A stretch of 58,514 nucleotides of DNA, filler included, from Sluysia triapertura (lineage: Eukaryota): assembly GCA_046118255.1 (NCBI GenBank). It is 4 parts of 4 records of this genome, joined end to end, with 100 filler letters (N's around TTAATTAATTAA, not from the genome) between each part and the next. Parts side by side here need not be neighbours in the genome. Positions count along the whole stretch, not along the records: positions 29,048 to 45,546 come from JBJNIA010202707.1; 3 more parts are not named here. One strand, written 5' to 3'. Position numbers and translations under genes: made by a program. This document shows positions 29,048-45,546 of the stretch, one piece after another (position 1 is the stretch's first letter; each line of letters begins with the position of its first letter). The notes beneath the pieces are model-generated. The model was not told the origin of the DNA and ran no database searches. It worked only from the letters and a program-made list of their open reading frames with translations.

Positions 29048-29118
29048 TGGTAACGCAATTTTATTTCACTTTCATGACTATTTATCGATTTTGCTAATAA
29101 CTAATTGTTGTACAAAAT

Positions 29119-30214
29119 ATGTTTTATGTTAAAGTTATTAATGCTAGAGATGATCAGAATAAAGTTAATTATGTTAATTATGTAAACTTTCAAGCATATG
29201 AAGATGAAGATCAGTATAACTTGTTTAACAATAGTAAAGATGATAATGTTCCAGTTACAAATGCTCAAGATGATCAGAATAAAGTTGATGATGTTAAATA
29301 TGTAATTGTAAGGATAAGTAAAACCTGACTGATAATAGTAAAGATGATAATGTTTCAGTTATAAATGCTAAAGATAAATATAACCTGATTGACAACGCTA
29401 AAGAAGACAATGTTCTAATTATTAATGTTAAAGTTGATCAGAAGAAAATTAATGGTGATAACTTCGAAAACTTTCGAGCATATAATTTTGAAGATCAGCA
29501 TAACGCGATTAGTAATAGTAGAAATGACGATTTCCAAAATAACAATGTCAAACATGACAGTGGCGAAGTCAGTTATGTCGAAGTCGAATATTACGAAGCT
29601 AACAATGATAACAAAGATAACAGTGTTGGAGATGATGTTACACAAACTAAGAAGAAGAAAGATATCAATGATCAAGTTCACAACAATAAAAAACATGATG
29701 ATTCCTTTTACTGCTACGAAGATAACATCCATAAACTCGAACATTACAAAGTTAATCTTTTCAATTTTTATAATATTTGTCTTTAGGAATTTTATGATTA
29801 TAAATTAATTGGTTTTATTTTCTTGATGATCATAATAATATTTATAGTAGTAATAAAAATAAATCTAAGGCTCATGAAATGTATAACAATAGTAATGATG
29901 ATTTTCGTTCACTTAATGATTATAAACGTGATGACTCTAGACTTAAAGATAATGAGCATGAGTATTACATGTTCAATAAACAAAAAATTACTCGTATAGC
30001 TGCCTTGTGTCCAGCTTCTACAGACAACAAAGGTGTTTGTTTAAGGGATGGAATGCTCTGTCATTACGCTCATTCTGTTAAAGAATTAACGATCACCAAA
30101 GAAGATGAAGCAACTTACAATAGACACTCACAAAGAATTTCAGAATTACTGAAAAGTATTACAGTATTACCACTTCATCTCGCAATATTTCAATGGACAA
30201 TAACATCAAGGTAA
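29119..30214 (+). pseudogene. D/N-rich repetitive ORF ending in an Unkempt-type CCCH zinc finger (few stops)
   Basis: Internal repeats (KDDNV.V.NA.DDQNKV) lead into CPASTDNKGVCLRDGMLCHYAHSVKEL (C-x9-C-x6-C-x3-H), resembling an Unkempt finger CIHETDARGHCVKNGLHCAFAHGPHDL. An inverted paralog lies at 39660-40330. Confidence 0.6.
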
Positions 30215-30881
30215 ATAGTTTTAACTTTGATATCTTTAATGTTATCTATTATTTTTATTATCATTTTTTTATAGTGAGTGACACAACAAAAAAAATGATC
30301 ATACATGGGAGTGAAGTAGTAAAATTAAAATTTTTCATAAATAAAATTTTATGTTGTTATTCTCAATCTTTTTCTAGAAAGAACATGACAAACACTTTAG
30401 AATTAAGAATTTCAAATCAAATAAATTTAATAAAAGCTAATCATATAATTTATAAAGTTAAATACCAATTAAATTTAAATTTTAAAAACAATTATAACTT
30501 AAAAATCATAATCATCATTAACTTTTCACAACAAAAATGGTGTCAGGAGTTCAAAAGAACCCTACATCCACAACAAATATTACAAAAATCTAGTAGTCAG
30601 GAATGTTGGGTTAATTTTGTAACTATGTAAATTTTAAATTTCGACAAAGAACAAGGAAGAATAACTCGTGTTAAGTAAAATATATTATAACAAAAAATTA
30701 TTACTACAATAAAATTATAAGGGAGATGTTATAATAATTATACAAAAGTTACTATTATACGTTATGCACTAATTTTTATTCGAAAGTATTTTAAAAATAT
30801 ATTTCATCAACCCTCTAAATGGTCGAAGGCAAATATAATAATTGTTTTTGAGTGGATTTTTCGCCAAGTAAATGTTGCTTA

Positions 30882-31015
30882 TGTTGGGGTAAAAAGGCCT
30901 AAAGTGCCATTTGGTAAAATTGACAATAATAAAATAAAACTGTTAGAAGGGACTGATAGCTCAGTGGTAGAGCATCGAACGGCGCAGCTAGAGGTCCATT
31001 TTATGAAGTCTAACA
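30882..31015 (+). mobile_element. tRNA-bearing element, copy 8 (T-arm deleted), TSD CTTA
   Basis: ctta|tgttggggtaaaaaggcctaaagtgcc...ttttatgaagtctaaca|ctta. Confidence 0.9.
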
Positions 31016-31799
31016 CTTATCTTACAATGAAATTGACTAACGTTACTATTTATTTTCAAGATTTTGTATTGTTTGAGCTGTTGAAGGTAACGTGAGAATT
31101 GCTGTTTATTATTATCACCAAAAGTTTAATTTCTTTGTTGTATATTATGACTTGTAAATTGACCTTGTGGCAGAAATATTGCAAAGAAATTTTTGTTGTC
31201 TTTATGCACTGTTTATTTTTTGAAGGTTAGTTTATAGTTGTATTTAAACAAAATTAATTTGTATTTTAAACAAAAATTAAATTAAATAGTTTACTCTCAA
31301 TAGTTTTAAATTTTTAAATTAAAATTATATTATTATTATAAAAACATAAAAATAAAATACTTACATTAGAATTAAAACGTCCAACAATATTAATCACATT
31401 AAAATATTCAATAATGTTCAAAATATTAATCAGATTACAATGTTCAGAAATATTGATTTTATTTTAAAATGTTATTTATAAAATTACACAAAATCATTGA
31501 TTGTATAAAAATCAAATACAATAATAAAACCATAATATTCAATGTCTCTTTATTGATGTATAGGTTTTAATAATTACAAATTCTAAATCAAGTAAAAGCG
31601 TTATTTCTCTATGTAATATAAAACTGCTGAAGTTTGCTTTTGTTACAGTAAATTTATTGACTTTACTGTAACTTGAAGATATTTTCAAAAAAGTAAGCTT
31701 TATGTCATCTTTATTTTGACATCAAGATTTTATTATTACGTTGTCATCACACAACTCTTAAATTCTTACAAAACGTAAAAATAGAGCTAATTTTCCTAG

Positions 31800-33093
31800 A
31801 AAAGTAAATAAATTTTCGAAAAAAGAATTTTCTAGAATTCTATGAGTTGATACCCATATATCTGAAGCTAAATCATAAATCATAAAGGCAGTTTACAAGT
31901 TGGAAATAACAATTTCTAGATTTTTACAGTGTGTTGAGGGCGAAAAATTACTTAACTCGAATACATTAATTGTATTTTTATTTTTTTTGAAACTTTTAAT
32001 AACAAAATTACAAACATTAATCAAAAACAAGTTATTTAATTTTAATTTTAAAATTACAAAAGAAATAGGCTTAAGGTCTGTAACAATTAACAAATTTAAA
32101 ACAATAACGAAGTATGGTCTTATACTGAAGTTGAAACATAGCAAATAAAGAAAAAGTATAAACACAATTATTAATAACCCTAGCAGTACTACAATCGACA
32201 TTCCTGCTTTTATTTCTGCATGATGATATAAAATATATGATAAAATAGATATTTTGTTTTCATGCTGATATCGTTAAAAAATGATTTAAACAAGTTAAAA
32301 TTTGAAAATGCTAATTCGCGATCATTAACAATTTTCTTAATAAGTTTTTCAGATACAATGTTCTTATCTACGAAACTATATACATAAACTAGTTTTGTAC
32401 ATTTTGTCAAATATCCTCTTATTATACATTCATATCGGCGAATAAAAGATTGAGTAATTATTAAATCGCCTTCCCTTACTGCTTGTGAAACATCAAAAGG
32501 GTTATAAGCAATTAATTTTTTAACAAATATCAAAGGCACATCTAAATTTTTCGTAATATCGTCTATATTTACAGACCACTTTTCTTCAAGCACATTGTTT
32601 ATTTGTAATGGCATCAATCTAAGATATGAAGAGTAAATTAAAATATTATTTATTAATTGTAAAATATTATCATGAATCAACATACTACTGACACATGATT
32701 CAGCAATCTTTAAATCAACTTCTGAAGTATTAGATAACACAAGTAACGAAACTTTATAGAAAATATTATTCATTAATTGTAAAATATCATAAATATCATA
32801 TTACTAGCACATGATTCAATAATCTTTAAGTCAACTTCTAAAGTATTAGATAACACGAGTAATGAAACTTTGTGATTTTGGGGTTCTATCTCTTCATAAA
32901 TTTCTTTTTCTAATTCATCAGGAGTTAAAACACCTTTACCATCTAATATATATGACAACTTTAACTTGTTACCACATATCAAAAGTTTTATTGTATCAAT
33001 ACAATTTTTTTCGCTTAATTTATTAATTGATGAGACTTCTTGCACTCTCTTAAAATCAGAGGCTAATATCTTAATTTCATCCAAAGTTTTCAT
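31800..33093 (-). pseudogene. UFL1: UFL1 (E3 UFM1-protein ligase 1) N-terminal part, disrupted, with an internal ~120-bp tandem duplication
   Basis: MKTLDEIKILASDFKRVQ..KLSEKNCID..LDGKGVLTPDELEKEI and IITQSFIRRYECIIRG match UFL1 (WEEIRRLAADFQRAQ..RLSERNCIE..LDGKEYITPAQISKEM; IFTEAFVARHKARIRG). The duplication is 32641-32758 / 32761-32872, with a probable ~54-nt intron near 32180-32126. Confidence 0.9.
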
Positions 33094-33226
33094 TTGAAGC
33101 TTTTAAACATCTTTTAAAAAAAATCAATATTGCCATCGTTTTATTAATTATATTTAATTAAATTCATTTTTGGTATTACTTAATAATGTATTTGAGAATG
33201 TGATCTGTAGTTAAATTTTTACCAAC

Positions 33227-34410
33227 TCATAAACGATGGCGGAAAAATAATGTCTGAATAAGTAAAAGTATAAAATCTTCTGATCTCTGCAAAATTGCTC
33301 TTTTATCCGATATTTCAATTTCAAGTTCACACAAATAATCATTAAGATCAAACTTATTAATGCATTTTACTAAAAATTCACTAGGACTTAAGCAACAAGC
33401 CATTTGCTGCAATAATTCTACGTTGCGACTAGACATTTCCATTCCAATATATACAGATTTCATTTGCTGAACCAAAATAGAAGGTATTGTTCCATTTTTA
33501 TTCCACATTTTCCCAACAACTTGACTAGCAAAAACTACTACTTGAAGAGCTTCATCGCATAAAAATGTATATGCACTTCGCTTAATTTATCTCGATAAAT
33601 TTTCTTGGTCAATAAAGATGTCATAAATCGATGTAACGGTTTAATAACACTAATATATACATTAGGCCAATTATTATATATCACAGTTCCTGTTTCTTGA
33701 AAGACAATTTCATCCTTTTTTAAATATTGAATATTCAAGTTAACAATTCGCTCGTAAAATATCTTAGACATTATATCAAATGTCTGCAACAAGTGTAATA
33801 ATATCAACTAAATGATATGAAATTTCAATTCCACTCTTCCAAGGTGAATCATGTTCAATATTCTGTGTCAATTCTCGTTTCATTGTATTAGTATTCTGTA
33901 TTAATGACAATGTATGACAAAATAAAGCATAAAATTCCAGAAAATTTTCGATAAATTGTTGTGAAATAGGTTTTGGTGAAAAATTTATAGCTGGTTCGTC
34001 ATTTTCTCCTATACCGGTAATATAGATGAGAATACTTCGTAGAATATACTTGATATCATAAATGACACGTAATTTTTGATTAAATGGATCGAATATATCA
34101 TCACGTTTATCATACTAAAGTATATTGGGATACTTTGGCAATGGTTTACTTTTTTCTTTTATGAAGTAGTGCAGTATAGTCATCAAATTTGTTAAGATAT
34201 TCTTTCTTTCTACTAAATGATACGCTAAACTGATATCAGTAAGTTAGCACGTATTTGAAATCATCGCATCTTCAGTATTATGATCATCTTCTATATATTG
34301 TTGCAAAAGATTTTTATAATTATCTAGAAGCAGATATGAAAATTCTTTCTTGAAGTATATTTCTTTAAACACAACATTAACAATAAACGCATTACACACT
34401 GATCTTGAAA
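33227..34410 (-). pseudogene. UBR1: UBR1/UBR2 N-end-rule E3 ligase internal fragment, disrupted
   Basis: KKEFSYLLLDNYKNLLQQYIEDDH, LAYHLVERKNIL, YDIKYIL, MKRELTQNIEHDSPW, ISVIKPLHRF and VFASQVVGKMWNKNG..MSSRNVELLQ match UBR1/2 ([76 protein letters not shown]). Frameshifts and stops are present. Confidence 0.88.
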
Positions 34411-34992
34411 CTTTTATCGCATAATTTTATCTGGTTCTAAATCATCTAATTTTATACTCCAAAAACCATATTCAACATTAATAGCATTTTTACCGTCAAT
34501 ATTTCACTGCCAATTAGATTAAATTTCTAATACAAATTTGATATTACATCAACTCAGAAGATGGAGAGTTAGTTCAAAGTGCTGTAGTACCATGTAAGAT
34601 TTGTCTTCTAGATTCAATTTGATTCAATATGGTCTATTTTAATCAAGAAATAAATTTTCGTCTTTATAATGATGAAAGTATGAACAAAAATTTTCAAATT
34701 TGTAAATTGTGGTTGTGTTTGTTGTTGTGCTGGTAGAGGTAGAAGAGAATTAATGATAATTAAAAAATGATAAATGATTTTGAACAAATATATTTATCTA
34801 TTACAACATTTAATTGTTATTTTCTTTGTTCAGATCTGGTGAAGAATCAGTTGTTGCATCTGAGGAGTCATTCAAACCGTTTATGTTGTTTTGATTGGCA
34901 GACAACTGTTGCTTAATTATGATTATTGATTATATTTCGATTATATCTAGTAGTTACAGTAATTTCCTTGAGATGAATAGTGTGAATCGAGA

Positions 34993-35377
34993 TCAAATAT
35001 ATTGTGTAGTAGTAAAAAAAGAAAGATTGATAATAAGGATAAAAGAAATAATAATAATGATAACAATAACGTGGTTATTATGTTTATTAATACTGAATTG
35101 TTGATGTTGAAATTTATTATGAAAATTATTATAAAAGTTATTACTTGATAATCATATTATATAACAATAATGACTATAATTATTATATATTTTAATACGA
35201 TCTGAATTGTAATAATAATCGCGGTAGTTCATGATAATTAGGTGCGATGATCATGTTTGTCTTTTGAATGAGTTTAGTAGTCTGTGTATATGTGAAGTGT
35301 TTTTATGTGATGAAACGTGATGAATTTTGTGTGATGAATTCCCTACAATAATAATATAAAATAATTAGTAATTCCCC
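34993..35377 (-). repeat. ~400-bp leader repeat, copy 1 (upstream of the UBR/UFL1 cassette)
   Basis: The reverse complement aligns along its length with 43434-43840. Confidence 0.9.
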
Positions 35378-36388
35378 AAAAAAACAAAATAGAAATACTT
35401 TTTCTGACAATGGTATGATTATATAAAAATGATATAAATATCTGAAATTAATCTCACCTTCTTACTTGTTCATAACACATGTGGATGCTAGAAAGTCAAG
35501 TACGTCATTCGTCTAGATGTTATTCTGCACAAACGTTAGAAAAACAATGAAGGACAACCGTTATGATTAATATTTTCCAGTTAGAACGATTTCAAATTGC
35601 AAAGATTGGAAGTAAAATGCTACATCATTCCGTTCTGTCACTTAATGACATGGCTAAAATTCTTTATTAAACAATCTCTAAATTATGATTATATGACAAG
35701 CGCTTGGAAATATATTGAACAATTTCAAAAAACCATTCATTAAGCTAATAGAAAATAAGCAAGTATTCAGTTGTCATCACAATAATTCCATAACACTTTA
35801 AAAAAGAAAAAATAATCTTAGAATAATAAAATAATATCTAGAGAAACTTTTCTGTCCCTTCATTTGTCAAGTATAAAAAGGTACTAGGTTCATTTGTCAA
35901 TTCATAATTCATAGTCACTAACAAAATTCATTATAGCATAATTTTTATCGAGCAACTCAGCTTGTAAAATTATTAAGAATTAAATCTTTTCTCTCATTAA
36001 GTTACGCTCATAACGAAATCATGAAATACCGTGTAAAATCTTTTTGTAAATCTTTTGAAAACTCCGATTTACTAAAAGGAATATTTGTAAATAAAAATCA
36101 TTACAAAGAAGGAATTAAGGTCTTGGTGATTTTATATTTTAAAATAACATTTTATTGTCCACATTTACCATGCATTTTCATTGACTTGTAGTTGTTATTT
36201 TTATGGATATTACTTACCATATTTGTAACCTTGTTTTTAAATTTTTAATTACTATATTACATTTGCTATTTTTGCTAAGATAAAATTAAATATAATATTT
36301 TTGAAATATGATTTCTTCAAATATAGACATTTGAAGGATAAATAAACTTTATTACACGTTACATAAATTAACTTGTTTTTTGAATTTT

Positions 36389-36473
36389 ATAGCTACTGAC
36401 ACCCAAGCGATAAGTTCAACGCCGTGGATTGTAGCTGAAACCATTGATTTCTCATTTTGTCTATATATAGAGA
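36389..36473 (-). mobile_element. Possible short non-autonomous Helitron remnant
   Basis: Minus strand begins tctctatatata and ends in a GC-richer hairpin-like ccacggcg...cgcttggg followed by gtagcta. Confidence 0.3.
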
Positions 36474-36529
36474 AAAATACTTACTGTAAATACGGTCTGT
36501 TACTGTCTGTAAATAACATATGAATTGTA

Positions 36530-36770
36530 CAAATTGTAAATATTAAAAAATGTTTTATTAAATATTAAAAAAGTTTTATTAATTGAAATAAAATTTTGTA
36601 AATATTAAAAAGTTTTATTAATTGAAAAAATTTATAAATCATTAAATTTTGTAAATTAAAACTTTAGAAAATAACCTTTGTAATGTAAATATTTAGATGT
36701 AAATTAAAATTAAAACTAAAACTTTAGAAAGTAACCTTTGTATTCTGTTAATGTAAATATTTAGAAAATT
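36530..36770. repeat. Local tandem duplications
   Basis: Repeated aaatattaaaaa(a)gttttattaattgaaa and aaaactttagaaa(a/g)taacctttg..taatgtaaatatttaga. Confidence 0.7.
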
Positions 36771-39659
36771 AATCGCATGATTTCAATTATTAGTCAAAAT
36801 CATTATTTTCATTTGAATAAGTTTACTTATGTCAGTCATGGAACAAAGTGTAAAAAGAATTGTCAAATGAATAGTAACGAGAATAATAAAGCTCATAGTG
36901 AAAATTTTTGAAACGAGTGACGTAAACTAGTTTGGAGAATTTATCAATAATATGCAATTTCGGAATTTACGATTCAGATCGTTATATATATAGTTTCGAG
37001 AAAAACCCTCCAAAGCTTACTCAGATATAAATTCATTTTTGGAAATCAAGAAGACATCTTTTTGACAACAATACTCGGATAATTTATCTATCGGCGATTT
37101 TTACAAATTATAAGTACGCTTATTCATAATAAGTGTTTGACATAAATCCGTTGCTTTAAAATACTACTCAAAATCCATTAAATTTATAACCGAAGAATTA
37201 ATCCTGGGTCAAACACAGCATTAAAATTTTATTGAAATTATTTATTTATTATAATTGGTTTTTCTTATCTTTATTATTTGTATATTGAACTGGATTTTAT
37301 GTAATTATTTGTTAATAAGACTTATTGACTTATTTTTGTATAAAGAAAAATTGTAGTATAAAACGATAATTTACTAAAATTAAATTGGAGAATTTACTAG
37401 AGTCGAGTCAGAAAATATAAAAATCATATTACATAGAAAGGATTAATAAGTTATTATAAAAAGCATAGGTAATCCTCATCAGTAAAGAATAGTTAGAAAT
37501 TAGTGACCCTCTTTTTCGTTAGACTTTCACGTTGATTGAAACCTGTGAACACGTGTTACACAGGCGGACCCATTTTTTAAGCAAATTTCATAATTGTTCC
37601 AAATAAGAAAGCTAACAAATATATTATACTATTAATGTTACTTACTTATAAAATGATAGTGATTACTTTCAAAAATGATAACGTGAATATAAAAGCAATC
37701 AATTATAAAAAGTAAGATATAAAAATTATCAATATTATTGAATAATAATATTTTCTAAAATTTATTTTATTTCCGTAATTTAAAGTTTACTCAGTTTATT
37801 ATTTTTTATAAATTAAAACTAAATTTTTTAAATAACTAATGAGTATATACTTAAAATTGAAAATCCGTGCAAATTCTGTTATCTTTATGAAATTAAATCG
37901 TGTAAAGTTTTGATAGACTTGTTATAAACTTTGTTATATCAAATTAAGTCAAGTAAAATTTTTCTTCGTCACTGAATGAAATTCGTTAATAGTCTTGTAG
38001 ATCTACACAAAATTGTTATAACTTTATTTATGAAAAATTGTTTGTGATGCATAATAATATATAAGGCAAATAAATTCTCACATAGTATAAACTTGTGCCA
38101 AGAGTGAGGACCAGCAGCATAAATTAAAATAAAATTAAAGTATTAGAAGTTTAAGTAAGTGAGAATATTATAAAATTAAAGCTATAACCCTTTAAAATAA
38201 AAGTAGCCTAGTATTACTAAGTTTTGATTATTTTAAGTTTTGACATAAATAAGTTTATAAGTGACTAATGCATTGGAATCTTTGAGATTTCGGCCCTTAA
38301 GTGTGTAAGTCCGGTGTCGTAGATGTCAGTGTCGAAATTGCAAAAACTGGCCGTTAAAGAAAATGTCTTTAGACAAATTTTTTGATTATTGTTCTGCTAA
38401 TTATAGCAAGATTCCTTTTGAGAAGTTTAAATCTGGTCTAAAAAGATCTTGTAAAATAAATTTAATGCGATTACATTAAACAATTTAGTGGTTATTGAAT
38501 TTTATCAATTTTCTAATTATGTAAATTAGCAATTAGCGAAAACATTATCTTAAGTTCGTCGTAAACACTTAGAATTGCAAATTTTAACAAAACAATAATA
38601 AATTAAGTGCACAAAATAAATTAAATCAAAACTAAACTAAATTAACGAAGTAAACTGATACGTGGCTGATACAAATTTATACACAAATATAATCGAATAT
38701 GTAGATTTAGTTATTACAAAATTAGATTTATCCTTATAAATAAATATCGTAAATATTTCAAACAAGGTATGAATTGATATCATAAAAATGGTAAAAATTA
38801 TAATACAGGTATGAAATTTTATATATTATTACGTAATAATAATATTCCTTGATTTCTTTAGATCAGCAATAAACACTGCACTACTTTAGTATAATTTTAT
38901 TATTTTTATAAAACAAATATAATAAGTTAAGAATTTAAAATTAACTAACGATTAGCCAAAAAATATGGTTATGAAATTTAAAATCAACAGTTCAATTTAT
39001 TCTTGCGAAATCGTCGTTATAACAAGCAATACAACTTGAACAAATAAATTTAACAGATTATTATTTGAATAAATAAATTAAACAAAACTGCAACCAACAA
39101 CTGATTTATAAAAATTTTTATGTGAGTTGTTTGTTAAAAACATCGCAATTTTTAATAATTTTTATTTTATTGAACTTATTTTAATTTTATTAATGCATTA
39201 TTGATATGATAATATATTTTTAAGTATAATACATATATCAAATAATTGAAATAATAGTTTTTGATACTAATAATTGAAATTTCAGTTTTTTAATAATTAT
39301 TTCAATTTTTTTCACAATAATAATAATTTTATTTATCAACTAATATTATATTACTTTGTATAAACATATTATTACTTTTAAAAATATAATTTTTATATTA
39401 AACATAATTTTTAGACTTTAATATATTTTACGTGATTACATTTTACTACATTTTATTTTAATATTTACATATTTTATTTTATTATTTACATGATAGACAA
39501 AACTAACGATAACAACTATTCTTTCCGAATAATATAATGAAATATAAATCAGTAAATCAAAAAACTGGATCATGAAACAATTCAAAATGATGTTGTTCAA
39601 TTAGCTAATCTTTTGAAATGTAATAAAATGATTTGTAACAATTAATATCAAATGTAACC

Positions 39660-40330
39660 AGTTGAAAATAACTTAATAATAACTTGTTCACTGTTGTGAA
39701 AGGTTGATGATGATTATGATTGATGGATTATTGTTATTTTTAAAATTTAAATTTAAATTATTTTTGACTTTATAAAATTTAAAATTAACTTTTATTAAAA
39801 ATTCTTCATTAAAATTTTTTAGTTTCGAAGTAATTATCGTATCCTCGCCATACAGAAATTGAAAACAAAAACGTAAAGATTTATTTTTTAAAAATTTAAT
39901 TTTGATATTTGACTGCAATGTATGATACTTCTTGACGTTCCTCTTATAAATGAAAAATAATAATAATGATTGTTAACACACAATGAATAGAAGTAAATAT
40001 TATTTACCTTAACGTTGTCGTCTAATAAATTATTGCCGCCTGAAATGCTGGAAACAATTGTAATAATAATAATTGAATAATAATTCAGCAACTCTGTAAT
40101 TCGTTGCGAGTGTAAGTGGAAAGTTGTATGATTTTCTTTGCTGCTCTTTAACTCGTGAACAGAATGAGTGTAGCTGCAGTACAATCCATGCAATAAGCAG
40201 ATGCCAATATTATCAGTAAGAGTTGGACACATAGCAGCTGTATGAGTTAGTTTTCGTCTATTTAACATGCAATAATCGTGCTTCATTATCTCTACGTCGA
40301 GAGTCATTACAAAAATACTCGTTGCCATTG
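39660..40330 (-). pseudogene. Second copy of the Unkempt-type CCCH ORF and its downstream region
   Basis: DYCMLNRRKLTHTAAMCPTLTDNIGICLLHGLYCSYTHSVHELK..HSQRITELL versus EYYMFNKQKITRIAALCPASTDNKGVC..HSQRISELL; downstream YKVK..LNLNFKNN.N..IIIIIN.SQQ is shared. Confidence 0.75.
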
Positions 40331-42515
40331 ACGTATAGAAGTATGTTTAGAAGGTGATTTTACAATGTTGAGAATGTGGTTTAAATCGAATTGTTAAGAT
40401 TGAAAAATAAAATATTTTAGGTGAATTTTTTGATGTAACTTAATAGTTTTGAATGTAATGTGGTTTAGATGTTATGGGATTATGTGCTTAGTTGATTTAA
40501 ACGGATGAAGATGTTTTTAATGGATGTAAAAGAGATAAATATTGGAATGTTCAAATGTTTAAGAGTATGGTTTTATGTACAATGTTTTGATTTAGTTTAA
40601 TGTTGTTTCTATTGATTTTTGAATGTGATTTGTAGAGAATGATTATTAGGGAAATAAGTTGTTTACTTAACTTTGGCTTTATATGAATGCAAGGGTTCTT
40701 TCCTAAATAGAACCTACTTACAAAAGATTATCGTCTGGAGCTGAGTTCGGCTAATAAGACGGTTTACGTCACTAATTGACGACGGTCTAATGAGACTTAT
40801 AACGTAGCGAATTTAACAATGAAACACCTAACAAGATTTTTATGTTAGTTTATATTTCAAAAGACTGATAGCAATACAAGAAACAATTTAATTTCAGTTC
40901 GTAAATTGAGACAGCCTTTTTACAGTCTGTCAAATAAAAAATATTTTTTAAAGTTGAATCAGCCTTCTTACGGTCTGATTATAATCAATGGTTGATTTTA
41001 ATTTAGAGGATAAGGCGTAAATGAAACACTTATATTATATACAATTCCACACAAGTATACAAACAAGAAGAATATAAAACAATTATAATAGCGATAATAT
41101 TTTAAGTCTTAAGGACTTTTCCTTAGACTGTTTGATTTTAAGAATAAGATTAAGTGAGCCTTTTTAAGGTATGACAAATAAGAAAATATTTTAAGTCAAA
41201 GTTTAATGATCCTATTAATTAAAATTAGGATATGTTAAAACTTATTTATAAAAAAATTACTTTTGCATGGATAATAGGTTTTTTGGTTTCTAGAAAATTC
41301 ACTCCTAAAATTTAGAATCCTTCTTCTGTCATTTTACGCTGAAAATGATTAATATTTATATTAAATTTACCTCCCTCCATCTTGGATTTTAATATTTATT
41401 TACTTCAATAAAACAATTAATTTTTTTTCTAATACTTTCTTATTGAAAATAATGCTAAGTAATTTTTTTTAGTAATGATTTTATTAAAAATTTTACTAAA
41501 TATAATTATTAAAAAAATAAAAATTTTGTAATATATAATATTAATAACTAATTTATGAAACAAAATAAAATAGATAAATTTTAGTTAAATATAAATAAAA
41601 CAAATAAACAAATGAAATACTAAATTATCATTTTTGTTAAATATCAATTTCATTTTTATTCAATCACATAAATATCAATTTCAGTCGTCAATTCCAATCA
41701 CTTGTTGATCACTTGATGAATTGTCACTTGATGAATTGTTCCCACCCAACATGACTAATTTGTGCGTGATACTAATTATGAATAATTTATTACTTTTGAA
41801 GTTTTACTTGATAATAAGAAGAATAATAGTACTTTTAATAATTATTTCTAATATTTTAATTATATAATAATTTAATAATAATAATAAGAGTAATTATAAT
41901 ATTTCATTTAATAGCTATTTTCATTTAGTTACAAAATTACAAAAATAACTACAAAATTAAATTACAATATTTACATAATATTAAAAATTACACATAAAAT
42001 TAAAATGCATATTTACAATACGTAAAATCTAATTTATTTTAAATAAAATTTATTTGTTAATAAAAAATATTTTTTAATTTTTCGAAGAAAATTATTTTTG
42101 TGAACTATATTTAATTTGTTTTGAGAAATATTTTATTGTGATTTTTTAATCTTACTTACGTCACAACATTACTGATTTCAATATAAAACGTTATAATTTT
42201 GAATTAAAAAATATTATATATTACTCTAATATTGTAGATTACTGTAATAATGTACATTGAGACTTTTCCGATTTTGTAATTTTTGAATTTGAATACTAAA
42301 GACAGTGAAAAAACTACATCATTTTTAATTTTATTCGAATATTGTAATATTATGACATTATTATTTTTGCTTGTAAATGAGCTGTTATTACTTTTATAAT
42401 ACTTTTACTAATAAAGTATTAAAGAATTTTATCCCACACAGAAATATTTACCTTTTTTGATATAAGATCATTTTAGATCTTATATAATTTTCTAAAAAAA
42501 CTAATCTCGCTAACT

Positions 42516-42550
42516 AGCGGATCCGAATCGACACGACTTTGTTATTTGCT
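42516..42550 (-). mobile_element. Possible Helitron 3' end
   Basis: actagcggatccgaatcgacacgactttgt: minus-strand GC-richer tract ending CTAG|T. Confidence 0.35.
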
Positions 42551-43433
42551 TTAATTACCTCCAGAAAGCTTGTATTATTATCTTTGACATTTCTATATTT
42601 TCTAAATTATTAAAATTTTATAAATTAAAATATTACATTAAAAATATTAAAAATTTATAATTAAATTTAGTTCGTATAAAATTAATTAGAGGCTTATATA
42701 TTATTACATTTAAACATAGAAACCACAAATAATTTATAAAACATAATCCTTCGTTTTTCTTGCATAAAATTTAATTAACTAGTACACTCTATATCGTTCG
42801 TAATTTCATTCAATAGCAAGCACTCATTAAATTTTTACATTCATTATCATTTATTAACAGAATAGATAACATAAAAAGCCAAATAAATTTATTTTAATGT
42901 ATAAATATCATTTCATACTACATATTGATTATTTGTCTATTGATTATTGATTATTGATTATTTGTCATAATATTAGTAATTATATGATAACAATAAACTG
43001 TAATTAAATTATAACTGAAAATACATTAATACAGACACACATTAGTACACACACAGAATTTGAATTCTAAATTATTACATCTTAAATTATGAGTTGTAAT
43101 CAAATTTGAATGATGTTTGAGATTGAATTAAATTATTGTCGTATTACTATTATGAATAAAATGATTGGAATAAATTATTGTCTGAATAAATAAACATGTA
43201 ATTAAATTATATGAAATAATAATATTGTATGATTAATAAACTGTATATTAAAACACTAATACATGAATAATAGCTATAAATTGCAAGAACATAATGTCTA
43301 TACATTGCAATAAATTTTATGTTCTACCTTGTGTAAAAGTTTAATTATAATATGACAAAAATGTTATAAGAATATGTTGCAATATCTTTATTTAATATGT
43401 TATAATATGTTAAAATTTCTTGATTATAATATG

Positions 43434-43840
43434 TGGGAGTTGTAATATTTATTTTATTTTGTGTAGGGAAATCATCACATAAAATTCATCACATTTCATC
43501 ACATAAAAACACTCCACATGTACACGAACTATTAAACAAACTACTAAACTCATTTAAAAATAAACACTACCATCACATCTAACTATCATGAACTATCGTT
43601 ATTATTATTACGATTCATATCATATTAAAATATTTGTAAAAATTATAGTCATTATTGTTATATAATAAATATCGAATATTAACTTTTATAATATTTTTCA
43701 TAATAAAATTTCATAATAAATTCCAACAATTCTGTATTAATAACATAATAATAACATAATTGTTATCATTATTTCTTTTATCCTTATTATCAATCTATCT
43801 CTCTGTTGTTTTAATTTTTTTTTATACAACACAATATTTG
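43434..43840 (+). repeat. ~400-bp leader repeat, copy 2 (upstream of the ELAV/unc-13/RYK cassette)
   Basis: gtagggaaatcatcacataaaattcatcacatttcatcacataaaaacact... to tccttattatcaatct..acacaatatttg; inverted match to 34993-35377. Confidence 0.9.
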
Positions 43841-43883
43841 TTGATGGCAAATAAAATCTATTAATCACCAGATGCTAAAGAAA

Positions 43884-43968
43884 GTATCACTAGCTAGATC
43901 AAGTTCTGAACCTATTAAAGGTGTTAATCTTTATATTTGTGGTTTACCTAAAAATTGACTCTAAAGAA
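43884..43968 (+). pseudogene. elav: ELAV/Hu RRM1-RRM2 linker fragment
   Basis: VSLARSSSEPIKGVNLYICGLPKN matches ELAV-family VS(Y/F)ARPSSE.IKGANLY.SGLPK. Confidence 0.85.
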
Positions 43969-43970
43969 TG

Positions 43971-44069
43971 ATGGTTTGAGCCATTTGTAACACAATGGCT
44001 AAATGAAAACGATGAAGTCACTATGGATATCTGTGGAATGTATATGAAGGTGATAGATCCGATGGGTTT
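43971..44069 (+). pseudogene. unc-13: unc-13 MUN-domain exon-sized fragment (1-nt deletion)
   Basis: WFEPFVTQWLNENDEVTMD/LWNVYEGDRSDGF matches Munc13 [33 protein letters not shown]. Confidence 0.88.
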
Positions 44070-44226
44070 CCGATGTCAATTGAACTGGCTCACTATAAAG
44101 CAAATGAAGAATTAAAATACTTTCAAAAAAATGCTTAATGAACAAAAAAGAAAAAGAAAAACTGATAAATAATATAATTGAAGAACAACAAGCACTTTAT
44201 CAAAAACATCTTGAAAACGTCAAGAA

Positions 44227-45530
44227 ATGTCAGAAATTAAATCATTAAATCATTCTAAAATATTGGATTTAAATATTGGTTATGTTATTTTGCTGATTTG
44301 TATTTCTGCATTTATTGTTTTAGTTACAATTTCTACTGTTACTTTTATAGTGAAAGTTAATCATAATCGAAATTTGAAAAATCGAATACATGAACAATCG
44401 AAGTCTAACAGTAGTATATTTTCGAAATCCAATTCAAAATTAAAAGAATTAAAAAGTGTATCTTTGCTAAAAATGAAATCAACTCCAAAGTCTTCAAGTT
44501 CTTCATTAATAATGGGAATATATAAAATTCAAAGTCAAAAGTTCGCTTTATTTACCTTGTAATACAACGAATAATCAAATTCAATTATTTCAAAATTTTA
44601 ACACAAATCATTGTAGCGACAACAATAATGTTGATAATCATAAAGAAAATCATCAACGAATTTGGCATCATAAACGAACTCGACGTAAACACATTCGTAA
44701 AATAAGGCAACATGATTATTCGAGATATGATAGATTATTTCGGAATACTAAACAACGACATGGTACTAAGTCTATATTAGATCCGTTAATTGATAGAGAA
44801 AATTTTGATCAGAATGAAGATTTCCATGTTTCTGTTGGGCGACAAAATGGAAATAATAATGATCGTGATGATATTGATAGTTATATTACTATAAGTAGTA
44901 AAGATACTCATCAAACTGGAGCAACACGCCTCTAGTTCACAGACGTTTCAAAGATCCTTCAACAGTAATCAATGAAATTCAGATTCGCAGAAGTGATATT
45001 ACTCTCAGAAACATTATAGTCGAAGGTACATTTTGCCAAATGTATGAAGGTACAATGATAATGAAATCGGGAAGAAGACAGAAAATGCAAAATGTACTTA
45101 TAAAAACATTATCAGACAATTCAAATGAAGATCAAGTTAAAGTATTACTTCGAGATGGAGTATTAATGGCAGCTTTACGTCATCGTTATTTATGTCGTTT
45201 GTTAAAAGCAGCTCCGTCAGTTTACTTCAAATCACAATTAATACAACCTCCATAGCAGAATTTCTCATCAAACCGTGTAACAATTATAATCAAAATTTAC
45301 CAAGCTTCAATTAACATTCTAGTGGATGTTTGAATTTAACCTTAACCTTATGCAATTTAAATACAAAGAAATTACAAATTTAAAACAATATCTACGACAA
45401 GCTTCTACTAATTATGGTTTCAACAATAACTTGACTATCGCGCATCCAACACAGCTTTTTAGTAGAGAACTGATCAAAACAGCTATTACTAGTCCAAATT
45501 ACCAATAACGATTACAAATAATGTTTTCTA
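44227..45530 (+). pseudogene. RYK: RYK/Derailed receptor pseudokinase fragment (TM helix + start of kinase domain), disrupted and truncated at the scaffold end
   Basis: TM segment IGYVILLICISAFIVLVTISTVTFIV; EIQIRRSDITLRNIIVEGTFCQMYEG, VLIKTLSDNSNEDQVKVLLRDG..LRHRYL and NLKQYLRQ match RYK (IAISRERITLKDVLQEGTFGRIFHG; FVKTVKDQASEIQVTMML..LHHRNL; NLKLFLRQ). Confidence 0.82.
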
Positions 45531-45546
45531 ATTATTTTATTGTCTG

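What the first reader, a model, noticed from the sequence alone, without database searches (positions are those of the whole stretch)
31800..45546. Same ~400-bp leader, different cargo: cassettes of captured host-gene fragments
Seen: a ~400-bp sequence occurs at 34993-35377 (minus) and 43434-43840 (plus). Downstream of the first lie unidentified pieces, then UBR1/2 (34410-33227) and UFL1 (33093-31800). Immediately downstream of the second lie ELAV, unc-13, a coiled-coil piece and RYK. All recognisable fragments are in the same orientation as their leader, abut with little spacer and carry stops or frameshifts. Established: serial, co-oriented capture of gene fragments is known for Helitrons and Pack-type DNA transposons. 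Inference: a transposon family here has a constant end and a variable cargo of host exons, acting as an exon-shuffling or small-RNA-producing system.
Basis: partly seen in the sequence, partly recalled or inferred. Interest (0 to 1): 0.85.

Follow-up and report, generated by a model that had tools for sequence, protein, structure and literature searches.

The report
Abundant repeat fused to gene fragments
Two diverged copies of a very abundant ~450-bp non-coding repeat each sit directly upstream of a string of intron-less, same-direction pieces of unrelated animal genes; one repeat-plus-pieces block is bracketed by a 10-base duplication, so the block probably inserted as one unit, a known kind of gene-fragment shuffling whose mechanism is unresolved here.

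Summary
The ~400-bp leader occurs twice, at 35430-34967 (-) and 43384-43871 (+), with a core about 85% identical. The named gene pieces are real:
- UBR1/2 aa 364-734
- UFL1 aa 1-256
- ELAV, about 32 aa
- unc-13, about 45 aa
- RYK from the transmembrane segment into the kinase domain

New here:
- The leader is one of the most abundant repeats in this large genome, with summed contig depth about 3x10^5 against 10-80 for flanking contigs.
- Neither leader copy has its own target-site duplication. Leader + UBR + UFL1 (35428-32233) is bracketed by TTTATATCAT at two boundaries defined beforehand (empirical P about 0.005).
- UBR is colinear with the protein over 1.1 kb, without introns.
- No Helitron ends or hairpin, no terminal inverted repeat, and no poly(A) in cassette A.
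- The RYK part may be a resident gene. The only public run lacks the window's 2-nt frameshift, and a 58-nt GT-AG intron would give 326 open codons.

Verdict: the idea of a repeat plus variable cargo is partly supported. The Helitron/Pack-type label is not. RNA-level joining by template switching fits best but is unproven. Other leader copies, parent genes and RNA could not be examined.

The parts
43384..43871 (+). Leader copy B. It is G-poor (6% G, 15% C) and non-coding. The best-conserved core is about 43432-43800, and similarity to copy A ends at about 43845.
   Evidence: BLAST and alignment against copy A. Summed contig depth is 188,769 / 337,449 / 46,520 in bins 43347-43946, against 40-120 in the flanking bins. 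No Rfam or tRNA match. No significant fold.
34967..35430 (-). Leader copy A, in the opposite orientation to B. Core is about 35375-35021.
35429..35438 (-). Upstream copy of the candidate target-site duplication TTTATATCAT. It directly abuts the start of the A/B leader similarity.
   Evidence: The boundary at 35430 had been set independently. Two random 30-nt windows of this piece share a 10-mer or longer with P = 0.0046.
32223..32232 (-). Downstream copy of TTTATATCAT (13 of 14 nt if extended). It lies exactly where UFL1 homology ends.
   Evidence: The UFL1 end at 32228 had been set independently.
34427..34985 (-). About 560 nt between leader A and the UBR piece. Its origin is unidentified.
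   Evidence: No Pfam hit for its open frames.
33230..34426 (-). UBR1/2 middle fragment, about aa 364-734 of about 1750. It is colinear with the protein without introns. It has in-frame TAA (34246-34244) and TAG (34117-34115), and two frame changes near 33800 and 33560, each at a T run.
   Evidence: PDB matches to UBR1 9wbw. Sequence read.
32228..33099 (-). UFL1 N-terminal fragment, aa 1-256 of about 780, starting at its own ATG (33093). A tandem duplication at 32640-32871 repeats aa 66-102. It was originally 120 bp and is now spaced 116 bp, so the frame is broken.
   Evidence: Pfam PF09743. tblastn with P0001 and P0032. Repeat. No UFL1 similarity elsewhere in the piece.
43845..43955 (+). ELAV/Hu fragment, from the end of RRM1 to the start of RRM2, about 32 aa. 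It begins within a few nt of the leader's end and stops at a TGA.
   Evidence: PDB 4ed5 HuR, E 1e-3, residues 74-98.
43972..44110 (+). unc-13 MUN-domain fragment, about 45 aa, with one frameshift near 44026.
   Evidence: Munc13-1 match, 21 aa at E 2.4e-4. Pfam MUN positions 149-167. An X1 contig covers 43999-44203 with no gap.
44124..44170 (+). A-rich tract, the only one in either cassette. It may be a degenerate poly(A) tail closing a short unit of leader + ELAV + unc-13.
   Evidence: at least 22 A in 30 nt at 44140-44175. Read laying skipped 44136-44169 as a repeat.
44215..45546 (+). RYK-like receptor kinase from the transmembrane segment into the kinase domain, cut by the piece edge. A candidate 58-nt GT-AG intron lies at 44559-44616. 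The window carries 2 extra nt at 44924-44925 compared with the reads. Further frame changes lie near 45200 and 45280-45320.
   Evidence: RYK 6tua, E 4.5e-8. Pfam PF07714. The X1 contigs lack the 2 nt at full depth. The joined model gives 326 open codons.

Best explanation
The leader is a full-length member of a very abundant (order 10^3-10^4 copies), about 450-bp, non-coding, G-poor dispersed repeat. In both places its 3' end is joined to a string of intron-less, co-oriented pieces of unrelated host mRNAs. The whole block, not the repeat alone, was inserted into the genome.

I think the blocks are most likely chimeric retrocopies. In this model a reverse transcriptase copies one cellular RNA, jumps to further templates (UFL1 to UBR to unknown; or unc-13 to ELAV), and jumps last onto the abundant repeat RNA, which it copies to its 5' end. 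This is the way U6-L1 and other bi- or tripartite chimeric retrogenes are thought to form.

What is shown:
- the copy number of the leader
- the identity, colinearity and orientation of the fragments
- the abrupt leader/ELAV junction
- the 10-nt flanking repeat around cassette A

What is inferred:
- that the flanking repeat is a target-site duplication
- that the joining was at RNA level
- that the leader is transcribed

Cassette B has two readings. One is a short unit of leader + ELAV + unc-13 + A-rich tail (about 43386-44170) lying upstream of, or in an intron of, a resident RYK gene. The other is a longer unit that includes a 5'-truncated RYK copy.
For: - Leader depth is about 3x10^5, against 10-80 for single contigs beside it, with sharp low-copy flanks.
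- No direct repeat of 7 nt or more flanks either leader alone. TTTATATCAT flanks leader + UBR + UFL1 at two boundaries fixed earlier by BLAST and tblastn. The empirical chance is 0.0046.
- The ELAV piece starts within about 3 nt of the end of the A/B similarity, and no ELAV sequence lies upstream of the leader.
- UBR aa 364-734 occupies about 1.12 kb, so it has no introns. UFL1 aa 1-256 is likewise continuous and starts at the mRNA 5' end, as expected if the enzyme ran off one template before jumping.
- An A-rich tract follows the unc-13 piece.
- Open frames of 89-196 codons in 75% A+T DNA (chance 1e-4 to 1e-8) show the pieces are young copies of functional genes.
- Five of the seven recognisable gene pieces in the 16.5 kb lie downstream of a leader in its orientation.
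Against: - Only two cassettes could be seen, and other leader copies could not be fetched.
- Cassette A has no poly(A) before its 3' repeat. Cassette B has no flanking repeat of 9 nt or more around the short unit.
- About 560 nt between leader A and UBR are unexplained.
- The intron structure of the parent genes is unknown, so 'intron-less' may simply mirror intron-poor parents.
- A 10-mer match somewhere in the wider search windows is expected about 0.7 times (my estimate). Its weight rests on its position at the two boundaries.
- The leader matches no known small RNA, and its expression is unknown.
- The leader/ELAV and ELAV/unc-13 junctions are not covered by any of the 8 contig pieces the tool printed.
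Confidence: 0.4

Rival explanations
1. Chance adjacency. The leader is an ordinary SINE- or MITE-like repeat that landed independently next to unrelated pseudogene fragments in a repeat-rich, pseudogene-rich region. The RYK part is simply the local gene.
For: - With thousands of copies, two leaders in 16.5 kb and differing downstream sequence are unremarkable.
- Gene fragments also occur away from leaders. The Unkempt-like zinc-finger piece lies inside another repeat, in two copies.
- Treating the cassettes as two independent clusters, co-orientation and downstream position have a joint chance of only about 0.03-0.1 (my estimate).
- The RYK frame is open in the reads.
- About 560 nt separate leader A from UBR.
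Against: - Neither leader has its own flanking duplication, while leader plus cargo in A does.
- The leader/ELAV junction is abrupt, and ELAV does not continue upstream of the leader.
- The ELAV/unc-13 mosaic needs a joining process of some kind in any case.
Confidence: 0.3
2. DNA-level capture by a non-autonomous DNA transposon. Either a Helitron has a constant 5' end and bypasses its 3' end to take up downstream DNA, or a Pack-type (Mutator-like) element carries the cargo.
For: - Constant 5' module with variable, co-oriented cargo.
- Helitron 3'-end bypass is an established capture route (PMC4778049).
- A 10-bp duplication is the size Mutator-like elements make.
- A faint Mutator-transposase Pfam hit at 41641-41751, E 0.089. 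This is probably noise.
Against: - No perfect hairpin (stem of 7 or more) with 4 or more G/C was found in the whole piece.
- The unit ends read TTTT... and ...CATATA, not TC and CTRR.
- A flanking duplication is not a Helitron feature.
- There is no inverted leader copy at the cargo's far end.
- UBR and UFL1 pieces carry no introns over 1.1 and 0.9 kb.
Confidence: 0.15
3. Assembly artefact, or intact genes made to look broken. Either the mosaic junctions are mis-joins at a high-copy repeat, or the frameshifts are consensus errors of the assembly.
For: - The only public run holds 70% of the sampled words.
- It lacks the window's 2 nt at 44924 and differs at 7 further bases in 346 nt.
- Both UBR frameshifts sit in T runs.
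- No printed contig crosses the leader.
Against: - Contigs match exactly over 41710-43377 and 44404-44615.
- A contig covers 43999-44203 without gaps, which confirms the unc-13 frameshift and the unc-13 to A-rich junction.
- The in-frame TAA and TAG in UBR are substitutions, not indels.
- The truncation of UBR, UFL1, ELAV and unc-13 cannot be an indel error.
Confidence: 0.1

Closest known systems
Chimeric retrogenes formed by reverse-transcriptase template switching (U6-L1, U6-mRNA and tripartite chimeras in mammals; similar chimeras in fungi and rice).
   Same: An abundant small RNA copied in full forms the 5' module. It is joined at its 3' end to 5'-truncated, intron-less, co-oriented pieces of other RNAs, and the whole is flanked by one target-site duplication.
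   Different: The 5' module here is an unclassified 450-bp repeat with thousands of copies, not a known snRNA. Cassette A has no poly(A) tail. Up to three or four pieces are joined, some only about 100 nt long.
Helitron gene capture (maize, bats, silkworm; Helraiser 3'-end bypass, PMC4778049; PMC3789558)
   Same: A constant 5' terminal sequence, and serial, mostly co-oriented fragments of several host genes.
   Different: There are no TC/CTRR termini and no 3' hairpin. A flanking 10-nt duplication is present. The cargo lacks introns.
Pack-MULE and other Pack-type DNA transposons
   Same: Non-autonomous elements carrying host gene fragments. The 9-11 bp duplication size fits.
   Different: Terminal inverted repeats at both ends define these elements, and none are found here.
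SVA and L1 transduction and exon trapping in primates (from my own knowledge)
   Same: A non-coding composite retroelement that carries spliced host exons or flanking sequence to new sites.
   Different: Those events end in poly(A) and depend on L1. No LINE partner, splice-donor use or poly(A) is shown here.

Membership tests
Helitron | 5' TC and 3' CTRR termini, inserted between A and T | tested here: not met
   The cassette A unit starts TTTTATATAATC after the repeat copy and ends ...TTTTATCATATA. Leader B starts in ...GCAATATC/TTTATTTAAT. The boundaries rest on only two copies.
Helitron | Subterminal 3' hairpin | tested here: not met
   No perfect hairpin (stem of 7 or more, loop 2-8) with 4 or more G/C anywhere in 29048-45546. 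An A+T-only hairpin cannot be told from background.
Helitron | No target-site duplication | tested here: not met
   A 10-nt direct repeat flanks 35428-32233.
Helitron | An autonomous partner with a Rep/helicase protein sharing the termini | not testable with these tools
   The genome of this organism could not be searched.
Pack-MULE / Pack-type DNA transposon | Terminal inverted repeats at both ends of the cargo | tested here: not met
   The only inverted partner of leader A is leader B, 8 kb away and pointing away from it. Nothing leader-like lies at 32233-32600.
Pack-MULE / Pack-type DNA transposon | Target-site duplication of fixed length (9-11 bp for Mutator-like elements) | tested here: inconclusive
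   A 10-nt repeat in cassette A. Cassette B is cut by the piece edge.
Chimeric retrocopy by template switching | Intron-less, co-oriented pieces of different RNAs joined head to tail | tested here: met
   UBR aa 364-734 lies in about 1.12 kb and UFL1 aa 1-256 is continuous. ELAV and unc-13 are 16 nt apart. The intron structure of the parent genes is unknown.
Chimeric retrocopy by template switching | One target-site duplication around the whole chimera | tested here: inconclusive
   Present in A (P about 0.005 at pre-set boundaries). Not found for the short reading of B.
Chimeric retrocopy by template switching | 3' poly(A) tail | tested here: inconclusive
   None before the 3' repeat in A. 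An A-rich tract at 44124-44170 follows unc-13 in B.
Chimeric retrocopy by template switching | The 5' module is an abundant transcribed small RNA | not testable with these tools
   No RNA run was available. There is no Rfam match.
SINE (leader alone) | Pol III head (tRNA, 7SL or 5S derived) and a LINE-like or A-rich tail | tested here: not met
   No tRNA or Rfam match. The leader's 3' part is T-rich, not A-rich.
MITE (leader alone) | Terminal inverted repeats and a flanking duplication | tested here: not met
   No significant fold (z -0.68). The longest direct repeat flanking either leader alone is 6 nt.

The most novel reading that the evidence does not exclude
This animal harbours a large family of mobile units built on one constant, G-poor, about 450-bp 5' module. 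These units pick up spliced pieces of many host mRNAs and insert them with a 10-nt duplication, yet have neither poly(A) nor inverted repeats. That would be an RNA-mediated counterpart of Pack-type or Helitron exon shuffling, operating at a scale of thousands of copies and by a mechanism that fits no described class.
Probability: 0.15. Interest if true: 0.75.

Novelty: new variant of a known kind. Interest (0 to 1): 0.45.

Why it matters
Suppose the leader-plus-cargo blocks prove to be a family rather than two coincidences. They would then show large-scale copying and recombination of pieces of host mRNA by a non-coding repeat in an invertebrate. That is a source of chimeric genes, decoy transcripts or small-RNA substrates, known in detail mainly from plants (Pack-MULEs, Helitrons) and from rare mammalian chimeric retrogenes. 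The combination seen here is a constant 5' module, intron-less cargo, and a 10-nt duplication with neither inverted repeats nor poly(A). It fits no class cleanly, so it could point to an undescribed insertion route. If the blocks are coincidence, this is an ordinary repeat-rich, pseudogene-rich stretch.

Tried and rejected
- **Fetching other leader copies.** Exact 25-27-mers from the leader core found nothing in metagenome, prokaryote-genome or viral collections. The leader's open frame and the Unkempt-like frame found no proteins.
- **Finding parent genes or this organism's own proteins.** A search of 1.84 billion representatives with the UFL1 piece gave at best 31% identity, to P0001, a divergent UFL1 known only by a UniParc number. 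A search with P0001 found only one relative at 54%, and that relative is no closer to the window. Exact-product look-ups failed.
- **Other gene fragments.** Pfam scans of 20 further open frames between and outside the cassettes gave nothing credible. A weak Rod_C hit was not supported by the PDB search.
- **Sequence relation between the leader and the other high-copy, G-depleted repeat at 40347-40946.** None.
- **Variant genetic code for the in-frame TAA/TAG in UBR.** Rejected. TGA also interrupts the fragments, and the gene set is metazoan.
- **Tiny introns as an explanation for the UBR stops.** Rejected. The stop-containing stretches align residue for residue with human UBR1 as I recall its sequence; this was not a tool result.
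- **The 58-nt RYK intron.** It is only weakly supported, because 5 of the 11 GT..AG pairs in that area also restore the frame.


Full report
**Setting**

The piece 29048-45546 has no N and about 25% G+C. The genes recognised in it (ELAV, unc-13, RYK, UBR1/2, UFL1, Unkempt) place it in an animal.

The one public run that holds it, X1, has coded names. It consists of 6.25 million contigs totalling 735 Mb, so the genome is large and repeat-rich. The closest UFL1 proteins in 1.84 billion representatives are only 31-47% identical. So neither this organism's proteins nor those of close relatives are in the protein collections, and I could not name the organism.

**Checking the observation**

The repeat is real. 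43384-43871(+) aligns with 35430-34967(-) over 504 nt at 74.6%. The core (43432-43800 against 35375-35021) forms blocks of 82-95% identity.

- UFL1: Pfam E 1.6e-22 and 5.3e-18. tblastn with two relatives covers aa 1-102 and 66-256 at 33099-32228 and nothing else in the piece.
- UBR1/2: three colinear pieces match UBR1 aa 364-410, 493-548 and 645-734.
- ELAV: the end of RRM1 to the start of RRM2.
- unc-13: the MUN domain.
- RYK: the best kinase match.

All pieces point the same way as their leader.

**What the leader is**

I laid the X1 contigs at 80% or higher likeness on 39547-45546. Summed depths over the leader bins were 188,769, 337,449 and 46,520. The bins on either side gave 40-120, and individual exact contigs nearby gave 10-80. 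About 7,300 contigs were laid in total, and up to 109 contigs support single variant positions in the leader.

The leader is therefore a short dispersed repeat with thousands of copies and sharp, low-copy flanks. Further properties:
- It is non-coding.
- It is G-poor on the strand that points to the cargo (6% G, 15% C).
- It has no tRNA or Rfam match.
- It has no significant fold.
- It has no inverted termini.

I cannot classify it.

**Is the leader linked to the cargo?**

Three observations say yes.

1. Neither leader copy is flanked by a direct repeat longer than 6 nt. In cassette A, however, TTTATATCAT occurs at 35438-35429 and again at 32232-32223. The first site is immediately before the point where BLAST had already placed the start of the A/B similarity. 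The second is exactly where tblastn had already placed the end of UFL1 homology. In this piece, two random 30-nt windows share a 10-mer or longer with P = 0.0046. This delimits a 3.2-kb block: leader, about 560 unidentified nt, the UBR fragment, then the UFL1 fragment.

2. In cassette B the ELAV piece begins within a few nt of the end of the A/B similarity. Nothing ELAV-like lies upstream of the leader. So the leader did not simply insert into a longer ELAV fragment.

3. Five of the seven recognisable gene pieces in the 16.5 kb lie 3' of a leader and in its orientation. Pfam scans of 20 other open frames found nothing credible.

Against this, there are only two cassettes. A repeat with thousands of copies will often sit next to something. 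I could not retrieve any other copy.

**Nature of the cargo**

UBR aa 364-734 (1,110 nt of coding sequence) occupies about 1,120 nt, so there are no introns. The UFL1 piece is likewise continuous and starts at its own ATG.

The pieces are damaged but young:
- UBR has in-frame TAA and TAG and two frame changes at T runs.
- UFL1 has a tandem duplication that was originally 120 bp and in frame, and is now spaced 116 bp.
- unc-13 has one frameshift, which an X1 contig covering 43999-44203 without gaps confirms.

Open stretches of 89-196 codons have a chance of 1e-4 to 1e-8 in DNA of this composition.

The 'coiled-coil piece' is mostly the translation of an A-rich tract at 44124-44170, the only such tract in either cassette.

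**The RYK part differs from the rest**

X1 lacks 2 nt at 44924 at full depth. That places frames 44513-44932 and 44902-45252 in register. If a 58-nt GT-AG stretch (44559-44616) is also removed, 44215-45252 becomes one open frame of 326 codons. However, 5 of the 11 GT..AG pairs in that area would restore the frame equally well.

RYK may therefore be a resident or very recent gene copy. The mobile unit in B may be only leader + ELAV + unc-13 + A-rich tail. I only translated the joined RYK model to count stops.

**Mechanism**

Helitron features were tested and not met:
- The ends are not TC and CTRR.
- There is no G+C-containing hairpin in the whole piece.
- A flanking duplication is present, which Helitrons do not make.

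The Pack-type reading fails on the missing second inverted repeat, although a 10-bp duplication is the right size for Mutator-like elements.

Intron-less, co-oriented pieces, one of which reaches an mRNA 5' end, joined behind a full-length abundant repeat and enclosed by one duplication, fit chimeric retrocopies made by template switching best. The missing poly(A) in cassette A, the missing duplication around the short reading of B, and the unknown intron structure of the parent genes keep this at about 0.4.

Rivals:
- Chance adjacency: about 0.3.
- DNA-level capture: about 0.15.
- Artefact: about 0.1. The window differs from X1 by a 2-nt indel and a cluster of substitutions at 44804-44838, and no printed contig crosses the leader.

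**Verdict**

The idea of a constant end with variable cargo is partly supported. The Helitron/Pack-type label and the proposed small-RNA function are unsupported. This is a variant of a known phenomenon, gene-fragment mosaics attached to repeats. It becomes interesting only if a genome-wide survey shows that it is a family.

Noticed in passing
window 29915-30533 (+) and 39692-40323 (-): A second repeat family (639 nt, 69.5% identical). Each copy carries an open frame with a single Unkempt-like CCCH zinc finger (Pfam PF25427, E 5e-7 and 6e-5; the two are 53% identical over 66 aa). Summed contig depth over the second copy (39747-40346), the only one within the stretch laid, is 800-1,360, so this gene fragment is itself amplified many-fold in the genome.
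   Followed up: partly
window 40347-40946: Another high-copy repeat (summed depth 8,400-9,600). It is strongly G-depleted on the minus strand (3.7% G, 22% C over 40347-40700) and lies directly upstream, in sense, of the Unkempt-like fragment. This is the same compositional pattern as the leader, but there is no sequence similarity to it.
   Followed up: partly
window 30951-31000 (+): A stretch that looks like the 5' half of a tRNA (GGGACTGATAGCTCAGTGGTAGAGCATCGAACGGCGCAG) in a local G+C peak. ARAGORN and Rfam do not call it. It may be a tRNA-derived repeat head or a tRNA relic.
   Followed up: no
window 44804-44838, 44924, 44960-44963: The only run holding this sequence differs from the window in three places: six substitutions within 35 nt, a 2-nt deletion that restores the RYK frame, and two C-to-T changes. 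Neighbouring stretches are identical. This could be haplotype or strain divergence, a paralogue, or local consensus error in the assembly.
   Followed up: partly
window 29089-29473 (+): Tandem repeats of about 60 bp encode an acidic, Asp/Asn-rich peptide repeat in a 154-codon open frame (29322-29783), just upstream of the first Unkempt-like frame. There is no Pfam match.
   Followed up: no
window 32640-32871 (-): A tandem duplication inside the UFL1 coding sequence repeats aa 66-102. The two copies are 86% identical, and the spacing changes from 120 to 116 nt within the unit. So an in-frame 40-codon duplication was later hit by small deletions.
   Followed up: partly
window 41747-41946: Summed contig depth is about 40,600, over what is mostly (AAT)n-like low-complexity A+T sequence. 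This is probably simple-sequence cross-matching rather than a discrete element.
   Followed up: no
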